Source: Vitrella brassicaformis CCMP3155
Taxonomy: Eukaryota > Protista > Chromerida
Direction: 5' to 3'
NCBI GenBank assembly: GCA_001179505.1
Contig: CDMY01000759.1
Span: 1-64,000, forward strand
DNA length: 64,000 nt
A model generated the notes under the pieces. The model had not been told where the DNA came from and searched no databases. It saw nothing but the letters and a program-made list of their open reading frames with translations. This document shows positions 3,422 through 63,232 of the stretch, piece after piece (the stretch's first letter is position 1; every line of letters begins with the position of its first letter). A program made the translations under genes and the position numbers.

Positions 3422-4912
3422 ATGATGCGGGCGGCTCCCCCCATCATGCGCCCCAGCCTCCGCTACGTCCCCGCCCTCCTGCTGGTCATCCTCTGCATGG
3501 TGCCGCTTTACCTCCTGTGGCAGTTCTCACGGGTCAAGGACGAACCCCGCCCCACCGACCCGGTCATCATGACGCAGCTGGCCAACCTGCGGGTAATGCT
3601 CGAGGGCACCAAGTACGCCAACAGCGGGCAGAGCCAGCGGCTGCTGCAGCTCGAGCACCTCATGGCGCAGCTGGGCGACACCGTGAGCACCAAGGAGACT
3701 GCCGTGGCCACGAGACTGTCCCATCTTGAGGAGCTCTACAGACTCCTGGCGGACTCGACGACCACCCCAGCAATGCGCAGGAGGGCAGATCGCAACCCGC
3801 ATTTGGCCGCCCATCACACATTCCGCGAGTCCAGGTCGCCGTCGCTGTCCCCCAGCACCCAGTGGGTGCCCGGCCTGCGGTGGGTGTTCACTGTGACGCC
3901 CACCTACCGGCGCGTGACGCAGAAGCTGGACCTGACGCGGCTGTTCAACACATTCGCTTTATCTGCCAATGTGCACATGATTGTCGTCGAGGACAGCATG
4001 AACAACACCGCCAAGGTTGAGAGGGTGCTGAATGAGAGCACGCTGCTGCACTGGTCGCACCGGCACGTCAGGACCACCGCTGGCCTCAAAGTCAAGGGCA
4101 GCGAGCAGAGGAACGAGGGCATACGCACCATCCGCGAGATCGTCTTCAACGAGACCGATTCAGAACTCAGGAAGGCTTATGAGGTGCGTGCACTCTGTGC
4201 TGGACAGACACGTGGGTGGGATGCCTGTGTGTACCTCTCTCTGTGTGTGGATGTGCAATCAGGATGCGGTGGTGTACTTCGCTGACGACGACAATGCGTA
4301 TGACGTGCGCATCCTGGACGAGCTGCGGAAGGTGCGCAACATCGGCACCTGGCCCGTGGCTCTCTCTGGGCAGCGGATTACCGAGCGGTGCGAAGTCGAC
4401 CCCACCACCGGCAAAATCAAGGGATACAAGGCATGGGCGGTGAGCGACCACACAAACACAGACACACGGCGACAAACATCCATGCTCATCTCTCGCCGTC
4501 CGTGTGTGGGTGTGGTCGTTGTGTTGTGTGCAGTCTCAGCGGCCGTATCCGATTGACACGGCTGGGTTCGGTATGCACGTGCGCTTCCTGCTGCACGAGC
4601 CGCCTGTGATGTTCAACCCCCACAGCAAAATGTGCCACCTCGAGACCGACTTCCTCAAACAGACCAACGTCAGCAGATACGACGTGGAACCTCTCGCGGA
4701 CAACTGCACAAAGGTACGTGTGCGTGCAGTGTGATGGGTGGGTGGATGGACAGGCAGCAGGGCAGCTTGTCATTTCTCTACACATGAATGGATCTTTCCC
4801 TCTGTGTGTGTGTGTGTGTGTGTGTCAGGTATACACGTGGCACGTGTCGACGTCGATCAAGTGGGGCGGCAAGAAGGCCCCGCCCAACTTCGATGAGGAG
4901 TTTGACGTGTAG
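3422..4912 (+). CDS. Glycosyltransferase family 43 (beta-1,3-glucuronosyltransferase/B3GAT-like), type II membrane protein
   Basis: Exons about 3422-4183, 4263-4439, 4534-4713 and 4829-4912 with GT-AG introns. Motifs VTPTYRR...DLTRL, IVVED, QRNEGI, VYFADDDNAYD (DxD), PIDTAGF, LETDFL, EPLADNCTKVYTWH. N-terminal TM LLLVILCMVPLYLLW. Confidence 0.92.
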
Positions 4913-56640: not shown

Positions 56641-57551
56641 GTAAACACACACGTTTTGTCGCCAAGCCGCACAAAAAGCAGTGCAATGGATGGGTGGTGG
56701 TGGGTGGATAGCACACTCGGACTTTGATCAGCGGAGTTAGAGTCCTTTATCTCTGTTCGTTGTGCTGTACATGTGGTGCCGTGACACTCAACTCTCAAGG
56801 CACACATACAGGCATTCATGCTGTCGATGGCTATGATACGTCCTGTTGCTCTGAGTCTCATAAAAGCACTCGATTTAGCATTGAGTCCTGGGGCGCCTGC
56901 CTGCCTGCCTGTCTGCCTGTCTGTCGCCGCTTCATTCACTGCGCTTGCCGTGTCACACCCTCATCGCGCCTCGCAGGGCAACCAGCGTGCTAAGCAGAGA
57001 TCTGGCACACATTTCGATGCATTCATAAGATTCGCTGTACATTTCACGCGCTCGGTCGCATTGTTCGCAGGCAGGCTTCTGCAGAGCTACTGTATGCCAG
57101 TGAGTCATGCATCTGATCTACCTCAAGAACTGACGCCAGGACACGCTCCAAACACACACGAACTTAGTCATAGCATACCCCAAAAAATCTCTGTCACTTG
57201 CTTTCTCTCGCTATCCGCCCGTCGCCAAAAACTCAAGACGGCCAAAAAGACATTCATTGGACCTTCGCCAAGGCAACAGATGAATGGGGCATGCCTGTCC
57301 ATGCCTCTCCTCTCTCTCTCAGTCTGTCTCGGACGTTGAGAGACGTTGACTACATGAGCAGCGCTCTCTCACTCGGAAACGCCGCAAAATGCCTCTCTTG
57401 CTCACTCTCTGCCATGCAGTCAAGAAGCGATAACAGCACCCACCCCATCTCACATCAATCCACTGCTCATCCATCTGACTGTACACACATAACCGCAGCC
57501 ACCGGCCCAACTGCACTCCACTCCCATCCCCTCCCCTCTTCCTATTGAACA

Positions 57552-60500
57552 TCACGAAGAAGACACAGCAGCCCTCTTCCTCTCACGCTGCCCGGTCGTC
57601 TTGGCCCCATTGATCTTTACACGCCACCCGTTGACGGACATCGCTTCGCTCACGCCTCCACTCTCGTCGTCCTCCTTCATGGCTCCGGGCGCGCTGGGCG
57701 CCTCAGGCGGCGAAGGCAGGGTGAGAATGCGGCTGGGGAAGACGCCCTTCTTGGAGCACACCATCCGAAGACTCTGTTCCATCGTGGGGTGACACGCCAG
57801 CAGACACATGGTGGTCTGGGGACGCGGGATGCCGTCGGCCGCAAGGATGTTCTGCATGTACCCCTTGCGCACCTCCAGTGCGTCGAAGGAGTGGCTGACG
57901 GGGCCGCGCGACACGCACGGCACCACTTCTGTGCCCCGCTCCACCCACTGGGCGTAACGGCCGCGATAAGGCAGCGAGTCAATGCTGCGGGCGGCGCAGT
58001 AAATGACCACACGATGAGACCCACTCTGATGGATGAGGGAGCTCTCCAGCAAGGCGCGCAGGGGGCCGATGTTGGCCTCGGTTGCGAAGAGCAAGAGGGT
58101 CGTGACCGCGTATTTGCCGCTCGAAGTGAGGAAGTCGCCGATGGCAATGCCCTCGCCCTCAGGACGCGTCAGCTGACACACACAGACATGTACAGACCAG
58201 ACGAGAAGTAAGCGACGATAACGGACGACGATGCCATTCGTACGTACCTGAATCGGTGTGTCAGGGTCTGCCGTAGCGAGCCACTGCAGCTCTTTGCACT
58301 TGACTCGCCTCCCCGAATCCGACCTCGTGTACTCCTTGATGAGGAAGTCCAGCCGTCGTGATGCTCCCTCCCTCTCACCGCCACTCGACTTCACTGGAGC
58401 AAGCAGACCCGGCGGCGGGCTAGAAATCGGCAGCGTGACCACTGAGCCACCGCTTGCTGGCGCAAGGTGCGCATACATGCCCGGCGTGGTGTAGCTGTCG
58501 AGCATAGAGGGCGGCACCTCCACTGTCACGTGTCGGTACCCCTCTCCGGCGGGCACCGATACGACGACACGGCCAGTGTGCCAGTCAGCCGAAGATGGAC
58601 GCGGAGACTGTGCTGGGGGTGAAGAACTGGGGCCGGCCAGACGAGTGGACGGCTGGCTTTGCAAGGCATCATCAGAGGATCGCGAGAGGGCTGCCGGCGT
58701 CCAGCTGTTGTCATCCAGGTCCATGTCGTCCTCCTCGCTGCCCAGCATATCGGCCGCCTCGCCCACCCCTGTGTCGATGGTCTCATAGAGCTTGGAAAGC
58801 TGCTCCTCCCGCCACGTCTTGGCCAGCTCCCGGGCGTTCTGGATCCCATGCTGGCTCGCATAGAACCTCGCCGACTTGCGGGTGCTGCCGATGAACACCA
58901 CGGCCTCAAAAGCCTTGACCTCGGGCTCCCAGAACACACCGATCGGATCAGGATCCTCGCCGGACACATCCAGCGACAGCGTGTCGAGTGAGGGGACGGG
59001 TTGGGGGAAGGAGAGGGGCGCCTCACGGGTCATCTCCGATGGCAGAATGGGCTCGGAGGCATCGACCCGCTCGTCGAGTGACAGCCTCTGGCGCTTACCC
59101 GTCGCCTTGGCCTTGGCGGGGATGCGGATCTCTCGGGACCGCTTGGCCTTGGTGGACTTCTTGGCTTGGGGACGACCCAGCTTCACGCAGAGCAGGTCTC
59201 TGAGCTGCTGTCGCTTCTCCATTAGCAGCGGGCTGTTGCTGAAGTCAGTCGAAGCTGTTATGGGGTCGTCAGTCTCGAGTGGCCGTGGGTTGAGGTACGA
59301 GTCCATCTTGGTCAGCTGCTCTAGCCGCCTCTCCCGCACCTGCTCGGCCGCGTCGATCTGCCCCTCCAGCTGCACAATGCGGGTGACACAGTCCTCAAGC
59401 TCCCGCATCCTCGTCAAGCCGATCTTGAAGCGGCTCTCGATCTCTAACAGCGCTGCCTCGTCGACGCCTTCAAGCAGGGCGGTGTCGGTGGCATTGGCGA
59501 TGTCTGGTGGATCATCGGTGCCCAATAGGTGGGACAGGAAAACCCCAACTAGATCGGGAACCTTTAATCTGTAGGATGCAGTCACACCAGGACAGACAAT
59601 GGGGGTCTTCCTTCCTCTTTTCGAGAGTCTGGCTAAAGTGACCTGTTCCTCAGGTAGCCGCGTTCGTTCTTGGAGCGCCGGTCGTTAGTCACCGTGTCGA
59701 GGATCTGATCGTAGACGCCCATCAGCTCCTCCATCTGGCGGCTCGGCCGGGACTCTCGAAGACCCAGCGACACCGGCTGAGGTCCCACCAGCCCTCCCTC
59801 CTTTTCGACTGAAAAAAGGCATCAGCAAAGGACTCGTGTGTGAAGACGCATAAGAGGGGCCGGTGGTGGCTTTGCTCACCTGATGCGGCGTCAGTACTCG
59901 GCATGAGCACTTGTGGCCCCGATGCCAGCGCGAATTCGTCGGTCGACACGTATTTGACGTAAGGCGTCTTGCCGGTTGTCTCGACAATCTCGGCTACCCG
60001 CCTCTCCGTCTCCTGCTTGATCTCGTCGGCGGTGGGTTCACGACCGAGCTCCTGCGACGGACACATACAGTGGGTGAAGGGCTGATGGTATCCTGTGTGC
60101 CCCCGAGCTGTTGCCTACCGCTTTCAGGTCTCTGAAGATCTCGTTCCTCAGTCCGAGTGACCTCATGAGCAGGACGGTGATGGGCATGGCCCGCTCCTTG
60201 GCCATGCACACCTGGAGGGCCTGCTTCACCTTTGTTGTGATAACAGTCGCCAGCTTGAACCCACGGCGGTACTCGTACGCATCGACGGCCGATGACACGC
60301 CACGGATGGCAGCCTGAAGGGACACACGCACACGCAGAGAGAAGGCATCCATCGACACGGATGCAGGAAGGCGAGGGCATGCATCCTCACGTACCGCGAT
60401 CAGGTCGGAGACGTAGACCATTCTGGTGGTGAAGTAGGGCTCAGCGAGCCTGTAAGCCAGCCGCAGGTTGTGCCGTGTGAGCTGGCTCCTCGCGTAGCCT

Positions 60501-62712
60501 CCCTCCACCTCAAGGGCCAACAGATACCGACTCACACGCACACCGTGGGCATTCTACCGTGTCAACAAACCACAGAGACGAGAATGGGTCATGTGTGAGT
60601 GCATAGATTTGCCGGGAACAAGTGAAGCTCTCACCCTGAATCGGTAGAACCACGAGTCGAGCTCCTCGAGGTTGAAGACCCTCTCCTCGGTGCCCGCCGC
60701 ATCGATGCAGAGCTTCAGCAGCGGGGGGATGAGAGCGCGGGTGGCCAGCGACAGGTTGGTCAGGGCCTTCTTGACCTCCTGCTGAGAGATCGACGTCTCA
60801 CCCTGCGACTGAGACCGCTCCTCGATGTAAGACAGCAGCTCGTCGTTAAAGGGCTTGTCCAAGACGTCACGCACGCGCCTGCAGCGCAATGCACCCATCC
60901 CGCGCATGAGGTCCGTCCAGCTTTCCGTGAGTGCGTGCTTACTGGTCCATGATGTTGTGTTTGAAGCCGGCCTCTTTGTCCATGCCGAAGTAGTCAAGCA
61001 TGGCATTGTAGTAGGGCATTAGCGACACCAGCTCCCTAATGAGCTCAGGGAGGATGTCGACGGGCTGTACTTCCAGCAGCTCCTTCCACAACGACGCCCT
61101 GAACCGACCGCCCGTCGCCTTGCGCTGCTTCTCCCACTTGGTCTCGCGGGCACGGACCTCCAATCCACGCACAAACCTGCAAACGGAAGACGGCGCGACA
61201 CGTGCATCAGTGGAAGGTTGATGTGCTTCTTGACAAAAAACTCACCTGCCGATTTCCATCCGCAAAGCGAGCTTCTGCACTTCTTTCGGAGGCAGCGGCG
61301 GGAAGGCCCCCAAGACGGCACCGAACTGGGACAGGGACACCCTCTCAGCCTCGCTCTGGAAGTTGGCCCCCGGGGGGAACTGCCACTCCCTTCCAACCTC
61401 CTCCCTGACCGTCTCCCGCCGCCGCCTCTCCTCTGCCTTGGTCAGGCCTGACGCCTGCAGTACCAACACGCCGCCATTCTCCACAGAGAGACTCACTCCA
61501 GCAGATGACTCGAGGTCCGACGCCAGCTCGGCCACTCGTGCGGTGGGATAGGACGTGTCAGACGCCTGCGACTTGTCGCCGGACAGGGAGACGAACTTGT
61601 CGTAGGAAGAGCCGCTTGGTGACCCTTTCCCCTTGGGGCGAAAGACGGAAACAAACTGGTCTTCCTCGGGGCGGAAGACGGCGCTCATCTCGACCTGGAT
61701 GGGGCTCTCATCGTCTTCCCCACCGTCAGCCCAACGCGGCACCGTGGGGGTCGGCTCAAGCAGCCTGGCCGCCAGGTCCTGTGCCGACTCGCGCCGATAG
61801 GCCGGGAAGACCTCGAAAACCTCGTCATACCGCCCTCGAGGCTGAGGCGCACTGGCAACAGGGGATGTCACATTGCCGCCCATCAGCTGAGTGGAGAGCG
61901 CTGCGGTCTGTGTGCCGGCAGTGAGGGACGCAAGCTGCAGCTCGGGCAGGAAGGCGCTGGAGGGAAGAATGGGCGCTGCGGGGGAGGGGTCGGGCATGAT
62001 GCCAGCCGCGGACGCCGCGGATGGGCGATCACGGAACTGAGGGATCTCCTCTGTGGGAAAGGGGAAAGGCAACCAAGCAAGCCGGTGTGCGTGAAGGACA
62101 TGGGGTACGGCTCTTGACGTACCAGTGCTGATGTTGTATTTCTGCATGAGTGAAAGCGCCTCATCCTCGGTGATCTTCCCAGTCCGAATCTTCCTGCGCA
62201 CGCACAAATACGCAGCACAAAAGGCCGTGCCATGTCGGACACTCACTGGCTATCACCTCACCCCTCCCTCACCTTTCGAAATGAATGAGGACCATCTTTC
62301 GCTGCTCGGCGGTCAAAAAATCCTCCCGGGCAAATCTGGCCTGACCGCTGGCTGACCTCCTCATACCCCCCCTCCTCTCCTGGTCCTCGTCTGTGTCTTG
62401 CTTCTCCTCAGAGAAGAAATTATCCCACACCCAGCCGAGAAAACCGTCAAACTTGCGGCTCCTGGCGGACTGGAAGGTCACAGGGGCCCGCTTGCGACTC
62501 GTGTCAGTCTTGGACAGGCCGCGGCGTGGGTCCGGGGGGATGAGGGAGGGCAGGAAGGCTGTCTCCATTCGCTGATGTGGCCGCACACAGACAGATGAGG
62601 CGAACAGAAGGACGAGCAAGAGACCAAAGAGGACGCGGCGCGCTGCTGACGACTGCCGAGAGTGTCTGTTCGACCGCTGATAGTGGCCGAAGCGCCGCAG
62701 GCTGATGCCCAT
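57552..62712 (-). CDS. Plastid-targeted sigma-70-like factor fused to an AP2 DNA-binding domain and an FNR-like (pKIWI502-type) oxidoreductase domain (~1,500 aa, ~11 exons)
   Basis: Leader ...VLFGLLLVLLFASS...TAFLP plus a basic S/T-rich transit peptide; sigma region 1.2 PPLPPKEVQKLALRMEIG; region 2 ARSQLTRHNLRL...DLI...AVDAYEYRRGFKLAT; region 3 ELGREPTADEI; region-4-like GVDEAALLEIESR; AP2 IGVFWEPEVKAFEA...ARFYASQHGIQNARELAKTWR; FNR-like YTTPGMY...ISSPP...DFLIK, LLLFATEANIGPLR, GYMQ. Every GT-AG junction I checked keeps the frame. Confidence 0.8.
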
Positions 62713-62854
62713 ATCAGATCAGCACAGCTGCTGCCATGCAGGGACTGGCAGTCGAGGAGCCAGATGAGGGTCAACGCGAGGGGCGCAGCACCATCCTGGA
62801 CAGCCTCTTCCTCTTCATCAGCTCCTTGGTGTCTGACCTCTCCAGCAGCTGATC

Positions 62855-62992
62855 TTTAGGGCTGATGCGCAGCACTTGAAGGCAGCTGCGTTCTCATACT
62901 ACAGCACACAAAGGCACTGGCACTTCTACGCTGCGGGGACGCGAGCTCGAATCCGTCGAGAAAGGCACAAACCCTAACCCCGCAAACCCTAA
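62855..62992. promoter_or_regulatory. Cluster of three telo-box/telomere-type heptamers upstream of the sigma-AP2-FNR gene
   Basis: TTTAGGG at 62855-62861 and AAACCCTAA at 62969-62977 and 62984-62992. Confidence 0.35.
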
Positions 62993-63232
62993 CAAAAAAA
63001 GACTGCGAATAAAACATTCAAGAATTCCATTCTCCTGTGCTTCCGCCGCCCTCCCTTCCCATCCCGGGCCGCTCTTCTTCCCAAGGCTCTCGCACCACCA
63101 CACTTTCTGAAATCGTCAGCCCTGCTCGACGTCTGGTGGATGGGTGGGCTGTCCGTCAGCACATCGCCCGCTATCGCCGCCGAGGACGACACACACATGG
63201 GTGGCACGGGTGGCTCGAACGCGCCAAAATGC

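What the first reader, a model, noticed from the sequence alone, without database searches (positions are those of the whole stretch)
57552..62712. Sigma-70 + AP2 + ferredoxin-reductase-like fusion with a plastid-targeting leader: candidate redox-coupled organellar transcription regulator
Seen in sequence: the ORF track splits this locus into many pieces, but canonical GT-AG introns join them in one frame from ATG 62712 to the stop at 57552. Domain order is signal peptide and 'AF' transit peptide, sigma regions 1.2, 2, 3 and 4-like, an AP2 domain (~58800-58945), then an FNR-like FAD/NAD module (~57715-58585). The key junction is AAC AG|GT at 59643/59642 and CAG|A TTA at 59569/59568, a 74-nt intron that preserves frame. 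The 677-aa downstream ORF has no ATG of its own near its 5' end. Established: plastid-encoded RNA polymerase needs nucleus-encoded sigma-70 factors; complex plastids import via signal plus transit peptides; AP2 is the main DNA-binding family of apicomplexans and chromerids; plastid transcription is redox-regulated in other algae and plants. Inference: one polypeptide combines a polymerase-docking module, an independent DNA-binding module and a flavin/NAD(P)H-type sensor. I know of no described protein with this architecture.
Basis: partly seen in the sequence, partly recalled or inferred. Interest (0 to 1): 0.95.

Follow-up and report, generated by a model that had tools for sequence, protein, structure and literature searches.

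The report
Sigma-like, AP2, dead-reductase fusion gene
One spliced Vitrella gene really does encode a single 1475-residue protein that joins a divergent bacterial-type sigma-70 core, a probable AP2 nucleic-acid-binding domain and a degenerate ferredoxin-reductase-like domain, a combination found nowhere else, but where it goes in the cell and whether it senses redox state are unproven.

Summary
Spliced RNA contigs from four public runs lie on the minus strand as one transcript with ten GT-AG introns, including the predicted 74-nt intron 59569-59642. The joined CDS, 62712 to 57552, is open for 1475 aa. The organism is Vitrella brassicaformis CCMP3155. The public model CEM32640.1 is identical from Met49, so it lacks the 48-aa hydrophobic leader.

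- **Sigma:** regions 2.1-3.1 are truly sigma-70 (E=6e-14 to RpoD structures). Y430, W433, W434 and four region-2.2 residues are replaced. Region 4.2 is only weakly recognisable and region 1.2 is not.
- **AP2:** probable (Pfam E=1e-4, below the cutoff).
- **FNR-like module:** real (E=8e-17; confident model; best named match plant pKIWI502). It has lost the family's invariant NAD(P)H-loop glycines and terminal aromatic, so it is likely a pseudoenzyme, not a redox sensor.

No other protein among 1.84 billion representatives shares the architecture.

My best reading is a plastid-imported sigma-derived polymerase partner with an added AP2 module. Targeting and function are inferred. The scan's other notes cover this same stretch and flag further divergent sigma genes elsewhere in this genome; I did not check those.

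The parts
57552..62712 (-). Complete CDS of 11 exons, 1475 aa. Exons: 62273-62712, 62123-62193, 61246-62050, 60943-61176, 60635-60878, 60395-60553, 60119-60313, 59880-60051, 59643-59808, 58248-59568, 57552-58172.
   Evidence: Ten spliced joints in RNA contigs. The joined frame is open. It is identical to public protein CEM32640.1 from Met49 onward.
62713..62930 (-). 5' UTR of at least 218 nt, with four short upstream ORFs of 7-15 codons.
   Evidence: Contigs of X6 and X7 end at 62930 inside the laid stretch.
62548..62712 (-). N-terminal leader, aa 1-55. It has a basic, acid-free 26-aa start, a hydrophobic core at aa 27-43 (62584-62634), then 'RPHQRMETAF'. The public annotation starts at Met49.
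   Evidence: Hydropathy and charge. Met1 has G at -3 and G at +4, while Met49 has C at -3. GC3 of codons 1-48 is 0.71 in frame, against 0.66 and 0.51 out of frame.
60007..60535 (-). Sigma-70 regions 2.1 to 3.1 (model aa 605-731), spread over exons 6-8.
   Evidence: phmmer against PDB RpoD/SigA chains, E=6e-14. NCBIfam sigma models reach E=4e-16 but align only their region 2-3.1 positions. My own RpoD HMM gives E=4e-14. Residue map.
59569..59642 (-). The key 74-nt GT-AG intron. It joins exon 9 to exon 10, which carries the region-4.2-like helices, the AP2 domain and the first half of the FNR-like module.
   Evidence: The joint 59568/59643 is seen in contigs of all four runs. The frame is preserved.
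59370..59459 (-). Candidate sigma region 4.2 helix-turn-helix (model aa 866-895). Its second helix runs on into a long helix.
   Evidence: This is the best ungapped match of E. coli sigma-70 residues 570-599 anywhere in the protein; 32 of 1000 shuffles reach it. MAFFT places it at the same spot. The AF2 helices there have pLDDT 60-71. No HMM hit.
59085..59174 (-). Lys/Arg-rich cluster (model aa 961-990) upstream of AP2. It could be a nuclear-localisation-like signal or a nucleic-acid-binding patch.
   Evidence: Read directly from the translation.
58803..58949 (-). Probable AP2 (ApiAP2-type) domain, model aa 1036-1084.
   Evidence: Pfam PF00847 at E=1e-4 covers 49 of 54 profile positions but is below the gathering score. 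The best PDB sequence hit is Toxoplasma AP2VIIb-2, E=0.043. Atlas features point to AP2 clusters at 0.87. AF2 without an alignment did not fold it.
57684..58586 (-). Two-lobed FNR-superfamily module of the pKIWI502 type (model aa 1157-1432), interrupted by intron 58173-58247. Its NAD(P)H-loop motifs are degenerate.
   Evidence: 105 relatives with E down to 8e-17. AF2 pLDDT above 90. Foldseek against PDB gives E=2.6e-16 and TM up to 0.78. Best Swiss-Prot model is pKIWI502, E=4.9e-21. Substitutions G1301E, G1303N, G1329A, CG to AC, N1421L.
   Evidence: The X6 contig has 404 nt beyond position 57300 (record position 4898 of 5302).

Best explanation
This is one nuclear gene of Vitrella brassicaformis. 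Its single mRNA encodes a 1475-aa chimeric protein with these parts in order:
1. An N-terminal leader with a signal-peptide-like hydrophobic core.
2. A long, low-complexity extension.
3. A divergent sigma-70 core (regions 2.1-3.1, plus a weak region-4.2-like helix-turn-helix).
4. A long helix and a basic patch.
5. An ApiAP2-type domain.
6. A pKIWI502-type ferredoxin-reductase-like domain that has lost its NAD(P)H-loop motifs.

Shown: the transcript, the reading frame, the sigma 2-3 homology, the FNR fold with its motif losses, and the lack of any similar architecture elsewhere.

Inferred: the protein enters the complex plastid through the ER. It docks on the plastid-encoded bacterial-type RNA polymerase through what remains of sigma domain 2. 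The aromatic residues that open the -10 element and several -35-reading residues are gone, so it relies on the added AP2 domain and basic patch for nucleic-acid contact. The reductase-like domain acts as a non-catalytic interaction or regulatory module, not as an NAD(P)H-dependent enzyme. I put the architecture at about 0.95 and the plastid-polymerase role at about 0.5.
For: - Single spliced transcript with ten introns in four runs and an open 4428-nt frame.
- The public protein is identical from Met49.
- Sigma homology: E=6e-14, 4e-16, 4e-14. NLRL, D403, EYRRG, T429 and Q437 are kept.
- A region 4.2-like match lies at the expected place after region 3. If real, the 74-nt intron falls inside region 4 and ties exon 10 to the sigma module.
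- AP2 is supported by three weak, independent signals.
- FNR module.
- The stand-alone relatives of the FNR module are ~300-aa algal proteins. Their N-termini look like signal peptides followed by AAF or ARF, typical of complex-plastid import. Both bacterial-type modules therefore have plastid ancestry.
- Met1 has the better start context and lies in the transcript.
- Plastid polymerases in this lineage use nucleus-encoded sigma factors (PMC10334805).
- Organellar ApiAP2 domains exist (PMC11742926).
Against: - No localisation predictor or experiment was available, and the public model starts at Met49 without the hydrophobic core.
- The basic, acid-free first 26 residues also resemble a mitochondrial presequence.
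- The Lys/Arg cluster at aa 961-990 resembles a nuclear localisation signal, and AP2 proteins are typically nuclear.
- E. coli residues implicated in core binding (Q406, E407, N409, M413; recalled from the literature) are all substituted, so polymerase docking is not assured.
- Every Pfam and NCBIfam hit is below its curated cutoff.
- Region 4 is unsupported by any HMM, and the AF2 model of the sigma part is poor (mean pLDDT 52).
- No orthologue was found, so conservation cannot be used as evidence of function.
- A different Vitrella protein (CEL93836) was taken as the ApSigma homologue in PMC10334805.
Confidence: 0.5

Rival explanations
1. It is a nuclear ApiAP2 transcription factor. Translation starts at Met49 as in the public annotation. 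The basic cluster at aa 961-990 acts as a nuclear localisation signal. The sigma and FNR parts are domesticated remnants of endosymbiont-derived genes that now serve as protein-interaction or structural modules in the nucleus.
For: - The public model starts at Met49.
- There are four upstream ORFs in the 5' UTR.
- Chromerids have a large, rapidly duplicating ApiAP2 family (PMC4501334).
- The promoter-melting and several core-binding residues of sigma, and the NAD(P)H loop of FNR, are lost, as expected for exapted domains.
Against: - Met1 is the first in-frame ATG after a stop, lies in the transcript, and has the better context.
- Codons 1-48 show coding-like GC3.
- The sigma 2-3 core is still recognisable at E=6e-14, with NLRL and EYRRG intact.
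- Both non-AP2 modules come from plastid-type families.
Confidence: 0.2
2. It is a plastid protein that does not initiate transcription. One option is a sigma-derived polymerase-binding competitor or tether. Another is a scaffold in which AP2 is used structurally or for RNA contact, as in the Toxoplasma mitoribosome, with the FNR-like domain anchoring it to a redox partner or membrane.
For: - Y430, W433 and W434 equivalents are lost and the -35-reading residues are changed.
- The mitoribosomal ApiAP2 domains act as scaffolds rather than DNA readers (PMC11742926).
- Another, more canonical Vitrella sigma exists (CEL93836 in PMC10334805).
- The scan's unverified notes list further sigma-like genes in this genome.
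Against: Nothing here separates initiating from non-initiating roles. R586 and R588 equivalents and Q437 are kept, so some promoter contact remains possible.
Confidence: 0.2
3. It is a mitochondrial protein. The Arg-rich, acid-free first 26 residues act as a presequence and the hydrophobic stretch acts as a stop-transfer anchor.
For: N-terminal composition. The best PDB sequence hit of the AP2 part is a Toxoplasma AP2 protein (AP2VIIb-2) that occurs in entries 9g6k and 9i05; from their chain names I take these to be large organellar-ribosome assemblies, which I did not confirm. ApiAP2 domains do occur in the Toxoplasma mitoribosome (PMC11742926).
Against: Mitochondria use a phage-type polymerase with no sigma (established knowledge). 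The FNR relatives carry plastid-type leaders. The PDB hit is weak (E=0.043).
Confidence: 0.06
4. It is an artefact: two neighbouring genes joined by mis-assembly, read-through or a chimeric contig.
For: Assembled contigs, not single reads, were laid. The tool warns that a contig across two genes shows no single transcript.
Against: - The join is a canonical, frame-preserving 74-nt intron inside coding sequence, seen in four runs from at least three samples.
- There is no stop codon and no start codon near the junction.
- GC3 is uniform along the CDS.
- The independent public annotation makes the same join.
Confidence: 0.02

Closest known systems
Nucleus-encoded plastid sigma-70 factors (plant SIG1-6; Plasmodium ApSigma, PF3D7_0621000; Vitrella CEL93836)
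   Same: [quoted passage not shown] ApSigma likewise has a long N-terminal targeting extension (PMC10334805).
   Different: ApSigma is reported to keep regions 1.2-4.2, with regions 2 and 4 highly conserved (PMC10334805). Here regions 1.2 and 4.1 are undetectable, and Y430, W433 and W434 are replaced. About 580 residues follow region 4.2, carrying AP2 and an FNR-like domain. This is not the Vitrella protein used in the ApSigma phylogeny.
ApiAP2 proteins, including the four ApiAP2-domain proteins of the Toxoplasma mitoribosome (mL161, mS130, mL143, mL153)
   Same: A single ~50-aa AP2-type domain sits in a long, largely disordered myzozoan protein. There is precedent for AP2 domains working inside an organelle (PMC11742926). 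The best PDB sequence hit is Toxoplasma AP2VIIb-2.
   Different: No known ApiAP2 protein carries sigma-70 or FNR modules. The match is below Pfam's gathering score, and the fold was not confirmed here.
pKIWI502-type FNR-like proteins (Actinidia P43394 and ~300-aa algal relatives)
   Same: It has the same two-lobed fold and clear sequence homology. It keeps 41 of 73 family-conserved positions, including PGxY, IxSPP, FLIK and GxG.
   Different: The relatives are stand-alone proteins, end in ...LNF and keep GSGIAP. The Vitrella module is fused, has E and N in place of the two loop glycines, AC in place of CG, and LP plus a 53-aa tail in place of NF. It sits on a long branch. Its Pfam NAD_binding_1 score is E=0.02-0.17, against 1e-10 to 1e-19 for most relatives tested.
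Bacterial sigma factors with C-terminal regulatory extensions (for example ECF41/ECF42-type; recalled from the literature, not tested)
   Same: The concept of a sigma core with a fused C-terminal domain that modulates its activity.
   Different: Those are ECF (group 4) sigmas with SnoaL-like or TPR extensions and intact sigma-4 domains. None carries AP2 or FNR domains.

Membership tests
Sigma-70 family | Homologous sigma domain 2 (regions 2.1-2.4) | tested here: met
   E=6e-14 to RpoD/SigA chains; E=4e-16 to NCBIfam sigma models; 34% identity to E. coli residues 361-485.
Sigma-70 family | Sigma domain 3 (regions 3.0-3.1) | tested here: met
   Alignments run through region 3.0/3.1 (RpoD_Cterm positions 1-121 of 238). 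Pfam Sigma70_r3 gives E=0.002-0.01, below the cutoff.
Sigma-70 family | Sigma domain 4 (regions 4.1-4.2 helix-turn-helix) | tested here: inconclusive
   No HMM hit. The region 4.2 30-mer finds its best ungapped match at aa 866-895, and 32 of 1000 shuffles reach it. Region 4.1 is not supported. AF2 pLDDT there is 60-71.
Sigma-70 family | Region 1.2 | tested here: inconclusive
   No HMM hit. The ungapped scan does not place it upstream of region 2.
Sigma-70 family | Conserved aromatic residues of region 2.3 that open the -10 element (Y430, W433, W434) | tested here: not met
   Y430V, W433T, W434K. Also F427L, T440Q and R441V.
Sigma-70 family | Curated family score thresholds (Pfam, NCBIfam) | tested here: not met
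   All sigma hits are below their cutoffs.
Sigma-70 family | Binds RNA polymerase core and directs initiation | not testable with these tools
   Needs co-purification and in vitro transcription.
AP2 / ApiAP2 (PF00847) | Profile match over the whole domain | tested here: inconclusive
   E=1e-4, 22-23 bits against a cutoff of 33.3, covering 49 of 54 positions. PDB top hit is AP2VIIb-2 at E=0.043. Atlas score 0.87.
AP2 / ApiAP2 (PF00847) | Three-stranded sheet packed on a helix | tested here: inconclusive
   AF2 had no aligned sequences for this part. pLDDT is below 50 for the strands and only the helix was predicted.
AP2 / ApiAP2 (PF00847) | Sequence-specific DNA binding | not testable with these tools
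   Needs a protein-binding microarray, DAP-seq or ChIP.
FNR superfamily, pKIWI502 type | Beta-barrel plus Rossmann-like two-domain fold | tested here: met
   pLDDT above 90. Foldseek against PDB gives E=2.6e-16 and TM up to 0.78. pKIWI502 is the best Swiss-Prot model, E=4.9e-21.
FNR superfamily, pKIWI502 type | Sequence homology to family members | tested here: met
   105 relatives, E down to 8e-17. 41 of 73 conserved columns kept.
FNR superfamily, pKIWI502 type | GxGxxP nucleotide-binding loop and CG motif | tested here: not met
   G1301E (100% G in relatives), G1303N (98%), G1329A (99%), G1396C (98%).
FNR superfamily, pKIWI502 type | C-terminal aromatic residue at the protein's end | tested here: not met
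   The family ends in ...LNF. Vitrella has LP there, followed by a 53-aa tail.
FNR superfamily, pKIWI502 type | Binds flavin and NAD(P)H | not testable with these tools
   Needs recombinant protein, spectra and binding assays.
Complex-plastid bipartite targeting signal | N-terminal signal peptide followed by a transit peptide | tested here: inconclusive
   Hydrophobic core at aa 27-43 after a 26-aa basic start; the next 75 aa are net positive. No SignalP, ASAFind or HECTAR was available. The n-region is unusually long.
Complex-plastid bipartite targeting signal | Phe at +1 of the cleavage site | tested here: inconclusive
   'AF' lies about 10 residues after the hydrophobic core. Phe is weakly conserved in Vitrella (PMC6668581).

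The most novel reading that the evidence does not exclude
A plastid RNA polymerase specificity subunit in which a eukaryote-expanded AP2 DNA-binding domain has been grafted onto a bacterial-type sigma core. The AP2 domain has taken over promoter selection from the decayed -10 and -35 reading surfaces. A dead reductase domain, derived from a plastid redox protein, couples the subunit to a partner such as ferredoxin. This would be a hybrid promoter-recognition device not seen in any organelle or bacterium.
Probability: 0.25. Interest if true: 0.85.

Novelty: new variant of a known kind. Interest (0 to 1): 0.62.

Why it matters
How chromerid and apicomplexan plastids select promoters is poorly understood. 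Only one sigma factor, ApSigma, has been studied. A transcribed gene that welds a sigma core to the lineage's main transcription-factor domain suggests a concrete, testable way in which nuclear-type DNA recognition could have been recruited to an organelle polymerase. It also adds to recent evidence that ApiAP2 domains work outside the nucleus.

If the protein is instead nuclear, it would be a clear case of endosymbiont-derived sigma and reductase domains being reused in a nuclear factor.

In practical terms, the public gene model lacks its probable first 48 residues. It is named only after its reductase-like domain, so neither its sigma part nor its AP2 part is visible to database users.

Tried and rejected
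- **Pfam on raw ORF pieces and single exons** gave only sub-threshold hits, because introns split the domains.
- **Word-indexed homologue searches.** Three searches, on the sigma part, on the region 2-3 core and on the AP2 region, returned only the protein itself plus one bacterial DnaG-RpoD fusion. No orthologue or paralogue was retrieved. The other Vitrella sigma genes therefore could not be compared.
- **Metagenome scan with exon 10**: no relative found.
- **PDB sequence search with the FNR module**: nothing meaningful. The family was recognised only by the exhaustive representative search, by language-model features and by fold.
- **NCBIfam on the C-terminal half**: no hit.
- **AF2 of the sigma part.** With 26 bacterial sigma rows (25 proteobacterial RpoD and P0107) the model was poor (mean pLDDT 52). 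Foldseek on it returned only sigma-70 chains, but with TM below 0.25, so it says nothing about region 4.
- **AF2 of the AP2 part** without aligned sequences failed.
- **Ungapped scans** for regions 1.2, 4.1 and 3.1 were not significant or were misplaced.
- **Supplement of the ApSigma paper** is not held.
- **Cluster look-ups** gave almost no taxon names for the FNR relatives.
- **Artefact or two-gene reading:** rejected on the splice evidence.
- **Functional NAD(P)H-dependent reductase:** rejected as the default reading on the motif losses.

Full report

The finding claims that many ORF pieces on the minus strand between 62712 and 57552 are joined by GT-AG introns into one frame, with a critical 74-nt intron at 59569-59642.

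I looked for public runs holding this stretch and laid four of them on 57300-63000. Runs X6 and X7 each give one contig (5302 and 5301 nt) that covers the whole locus with ten internal skips. Run X1 gives a 2885-nt contig covering 57300-60001 with three of these skips. Run X2 supports four of them. Every skip has CT..AC ends on the + strand, which is GT..AG on the minus strand.

X6 and X7 are not labelled as RNA, but their contigs lack all ten introns, so they derive from spliced RNA.

After placing each intron on its GT..AG register, the exons are:
- 62273-62712
- 62123-62193
- 61246-62050
- 60943-61176
- 60635-60878
- 60395-60553
- 60119-60313
- 59880-60051
- 59643-59808
- 58248-59568
- 57552-58172

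They join into a 4428-nt CDS with one terminal stop, giving 1475 aa. The contigs end at 62930, inside the laid stretch, so the 5' UTR is at least 218 nt. They run about 404 nt past 57300, so the 3' UTR is about 650 nt.

Two introns are in frame and stop-free: 58173-58247 (75 nt) and 62051-62122 (72 nt). The raw '677-aa ORF' therefore contains 25 residues of translated intron.

**2. Identity of the gene**

An exhaustive search of 1.84 billion representative proteins with the C-terminal 671 residues found one protein at 100% identity. This is P0001, 1427 aa. It is CEM32640.1 / UniProt A0A0G4GQB6 of Vitrella brassicaformis CCMP3155, named only 'FAD-binding FR-type domain-containing protein'.

P0001 equals my spliced model from Met49 to the end. 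An independent annotation therefore makes the same ten joins but starts 48 codons later.

Met1 (62712) is the first in-frame ATG after a stop and lies in the transcript. It has G at -3 and G at +4, while Met49 has C at -3. Codons 1-48 have GC3 of 0.71 in frame, against 0.66 and 0.51 out of frame. The whole CDS has 0.78, 0.62 and 0.47. I therefore take Met1 as the probable start. Four short upstream ORFs precede it, so this is not certain.

**3. The sigma part**

Pfam on pieces or on the whole protein gives only sub-threshold hits: Sigma70_r3 at E=0.002-0.01 and Sigma70_r2 at E=0.02-0.45. Three other comparisons are unambiguous for regions 2.1 to 3.1:
- phmmer against PDB sequences gives E=6e-14 to RpoD/SigA chains, and the 60 listed matches are all sigma factors.
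- NCBIfam gives 33 family hits, and the 25 shown are all sigma models, down to E=4e-16.
- An HMM I built from 81 proteobacterial RpoD genes gives E=4e-14.

All these alignments stop near RpoD_Cterm position 121 of 238, which is within region 3.

A pairwise map to E. coli sigma-70 covers residues 361-485 against model 605-729 at 34% identity:
- Kept: N383-L386 (NLRL), D403, E420-G424 (EYRRG), T429, Q437.
- Replaced in region 2.2: Q406A, E407A, N409I, M413S.
- Replaced in regions 2.3 and 2.4: Y425F, F427L, Y430V, W433T, W434K, T440Q, R441V.

That Y430, W433 and W434 act in -10 melting, and that the region-2.2 residues act in core binding, is recalled from the sigma-70 literature. I did not test it here.

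Region 4 is not found by any HMM. A global MAFFT alignment with RpoD places the region 4.2 helix-turn-helix on model 866-895. An ungapped scan with E. coli residues 570-599 finds its best score in the whole protein at exactly that place, and 32 of 1000 shuffles reach it. In that register R586 and R588 are kept, while R584, E585 and Q589 are changed. The match is weak but lies in the right order.

If it is real, the 74-nt intron falls between a region 4.1-like and a region 4.2-like segment. Exon 10 would then belong to the sigma module itself. Regions 1.2 and 4.1 have no statistical support.

AF2 of aa 400-953 with 26 bacterial sigma rows was poor (mean pLDDT 52). Foldseek on it returned only sigma-70 chains, but at TM below 0.25. 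I draw nothing about region 4 from it beyond a helix pattern compatible with a helix-turn-helix that runs on into a 42-residue helix.

**4. The AP2 part**

Pfam PF00847 matches model aa 1036-1084 (58803-58949) over 49 of 54 profile positions. The score is E=1e-4 to 2e-4 and 22-23 bits, and the gathering score is 33.3.

The best PDB sequence hit of this segment is a Toxoplasma 'AP2 domain transcription factor AP2VIIb-2', in entries 9g6k and 9i05 (E=0.043). Language-model features place the segment nearest to clusters carrying AP2 (0.87).

AF2 had no aligned sequences for this part and did not fold the strands. A last word-indexed search on this region found only the protein itself.

Three weak, independent signals agree. 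I rate the AP2 assignment as probable, about 0.85, but not proven.

**5. The reductase-like part**

The exhaustive search found 105 relatives with E down to 8e-17. All match only model aa ~1150-1430, and almost all are 200-420 aa long. Those tested carry NAD_binding_1, most of them at E=1e-10 to 1e-19. The Vitrella module reaches only E=0.02-0.17.

With these relatives as the alignment, AF2 gives pLDDT above 90 across the module. Foldseek finds ferredoxin/flavodoxin-NADP reductases, flavohaemoglobin reductase domains and cytochrome b5 reductases at E=2.6e-16 and TM up to 0.78. The best Swiss-Prot model is plant 'Fruit protein pKIWI502' at E=4.9e-21. Language-model features agree.

Full-length relatives begin with signal-peptide-like stretches followed by AAF or ARF, and they end in ...LNF. 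That is the pattern of proteins imported into complex plastids.

Column by column, the Vitrella module keeps 41 of 73 family-conserved positions. The losses are concentrated in the nucleotide-binding half:
- G1301E (G in 100% of relatives) and G1303N (98%), the two glycines of the GxGxxP loop.
- G1329A (99%).
- CG to AC at 1395-1396.
- N1421L (94%).
- Phe to Pro at 1422, the family's terminal Phe (68% of relatives), after which the chain continues for 53 more residues.

In a tree of the family it sits on the fifth-longest of 96 terminal branches, 1.52 against a median of 0.61.

So the fold is real, but the features expected for NAD(P)H binding and hydride transfer are gone. A non-catalytic interaction module is the more economical reading. 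Flavin binding by the better-kept first half cannot be excluded.

**6. The leader and other features**

Residues 1-26 are basic and acid-free (net +7). Residues 27-43 are strongly hydrophobic. The next 75 residues are net positive. This fits a signal peptide or signal anchor followed by a transit-peptide-like region.

The n-region is unusually long, and the same composition could pass for a mitochondrial presequence with a stop-transfer anchor. In Vitrella the Phe at +1 is only weakly conserved (PMC6668581). No targeting predictor was available.

A Lys/Arg cluster at aa 961-990, just upstream of AP2, could be a nucleic-acid-binding patch or a nuclear localisation signal.

**7. Uniqueness**

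In the exhaustive search, no protein other than P0001 matched the region 4-like, linker or AP2 part at E<=0.001. None of the longer FNR-family hits carries sigma or AP2 domains.

Word-indexed searches with the sigma part found only a bacterial DnaG-RpoD fusion. A metagenome scan found nothing. Literature searches found no description of a sigma-AP2 or sigma-FNR fusion.

The ApSigma study used a different Vitrella protein, CEL93836, as the chromerid sigma homologue (PMC10334805). This gene is therefore an additional, divergent sigma-like paralogue. Unverified notes of this scan list further divergent sigma-like genes in the same genome.

**8. How it most likely works**

Shown: one mRNA, one frame, a sigma 2-3 core, a probable AP2 domain, and a degenerate pKIWI502-type domain.

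Inferred: both bacterial-type modules descend from plastid-targeted families, and the probable start adds a hydrophobic leader. The protein is therefore most likely imported into the plastid. There it would contact the plastid-encoded polymerase through sigma domain 2. Having lost the tryptophan pair and several -35-reading residues, it would depend on the AP2 domain and the basic patch for nucleic-acid recognition. The dead reductase domain would serve as a docking or regulatory surface.

The substitutions at four region-2.2 positions mean that even polymerase docking needs testing.

The rivals are a nuclear ApiAP2 factor with exapted organellar domains, a non-initiating plastid factor or scaffold, a mitochondrial location, and an artefact. 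They are weighed in the report sections. Only the artefact is effectively excluded.

**9. Comparison with known systems, and verdict**

It works most like a nucleus-encoded plastid sigma factor, but it fails several defining tests of a functional sigma-70. Its AP2 and FNR modules each fall short of their families' curated or catalytic criteria.

I file it as a new variant of a known kind: a sigma-70-derived protein with an undescribed domain fusion, known so far from one species. A fusion to a sigma core would still surprise specialists and can be tested directly.

Noticed in passing
window 62569-62712 (-): The public gene model (CEM32640.1 / A0A0G4GQB6) starts at Met49. It omits 48 upstream in-frame codons that lie in the transcript and encode a basic start plus a hydrophobic core. 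The annotated protein therefore looks leaderless.
   Followed up: partly
window 62713-62930 (-): The 5' UTR carries four short upstream ORFs (ATGs at 62897, 62818, 62794 and 62737; 7-15 codons, none in the main frame). They might modulate translation or start-site choice.
   Followed up: no
window 58173-58247 and 62051-62122 (-): Two introns have lengths divisible by three and no in-frame stop, so ORF finders read straight through them. Any ORF-based protein from this locus carries 25 or 24 spurious residues.
   Followed up: yes
P0003, P0005, P0108, P0111 (relatives of the FNR-like module): The stand-alone pKIWI502-like proteins of complex-plastid algae have signal-peptide-like starts followed by AAF or ARF, and they all end in ...GR(I/V)L(L/F)NF. 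This looks like a conserved, uncharacterised plastid FNR-like family.
   Followed up: partly
P0107 (JGI metagenome protein, 1100 aa): This bacterial protein combines DnaG primase domains with a full sigma-70 (Pfam regions 1.2, 2, 3 and 4) in one chain. It could be a fusion of the neighbouring dnaG and rpoD genes, or a missed stop codon.
   Followed up: no
same genome, other windows (scan notes s1-212000, s1-221642, s1-212280, s1-226920): First-stage notes list several more divergent sigma-70-like genes in Vitrella, one with a ~175-aa extension after region 4. If real, Vitrella has an expanded, fast-evolving sigma family that deserves a joint analysis.
   Followed up: no
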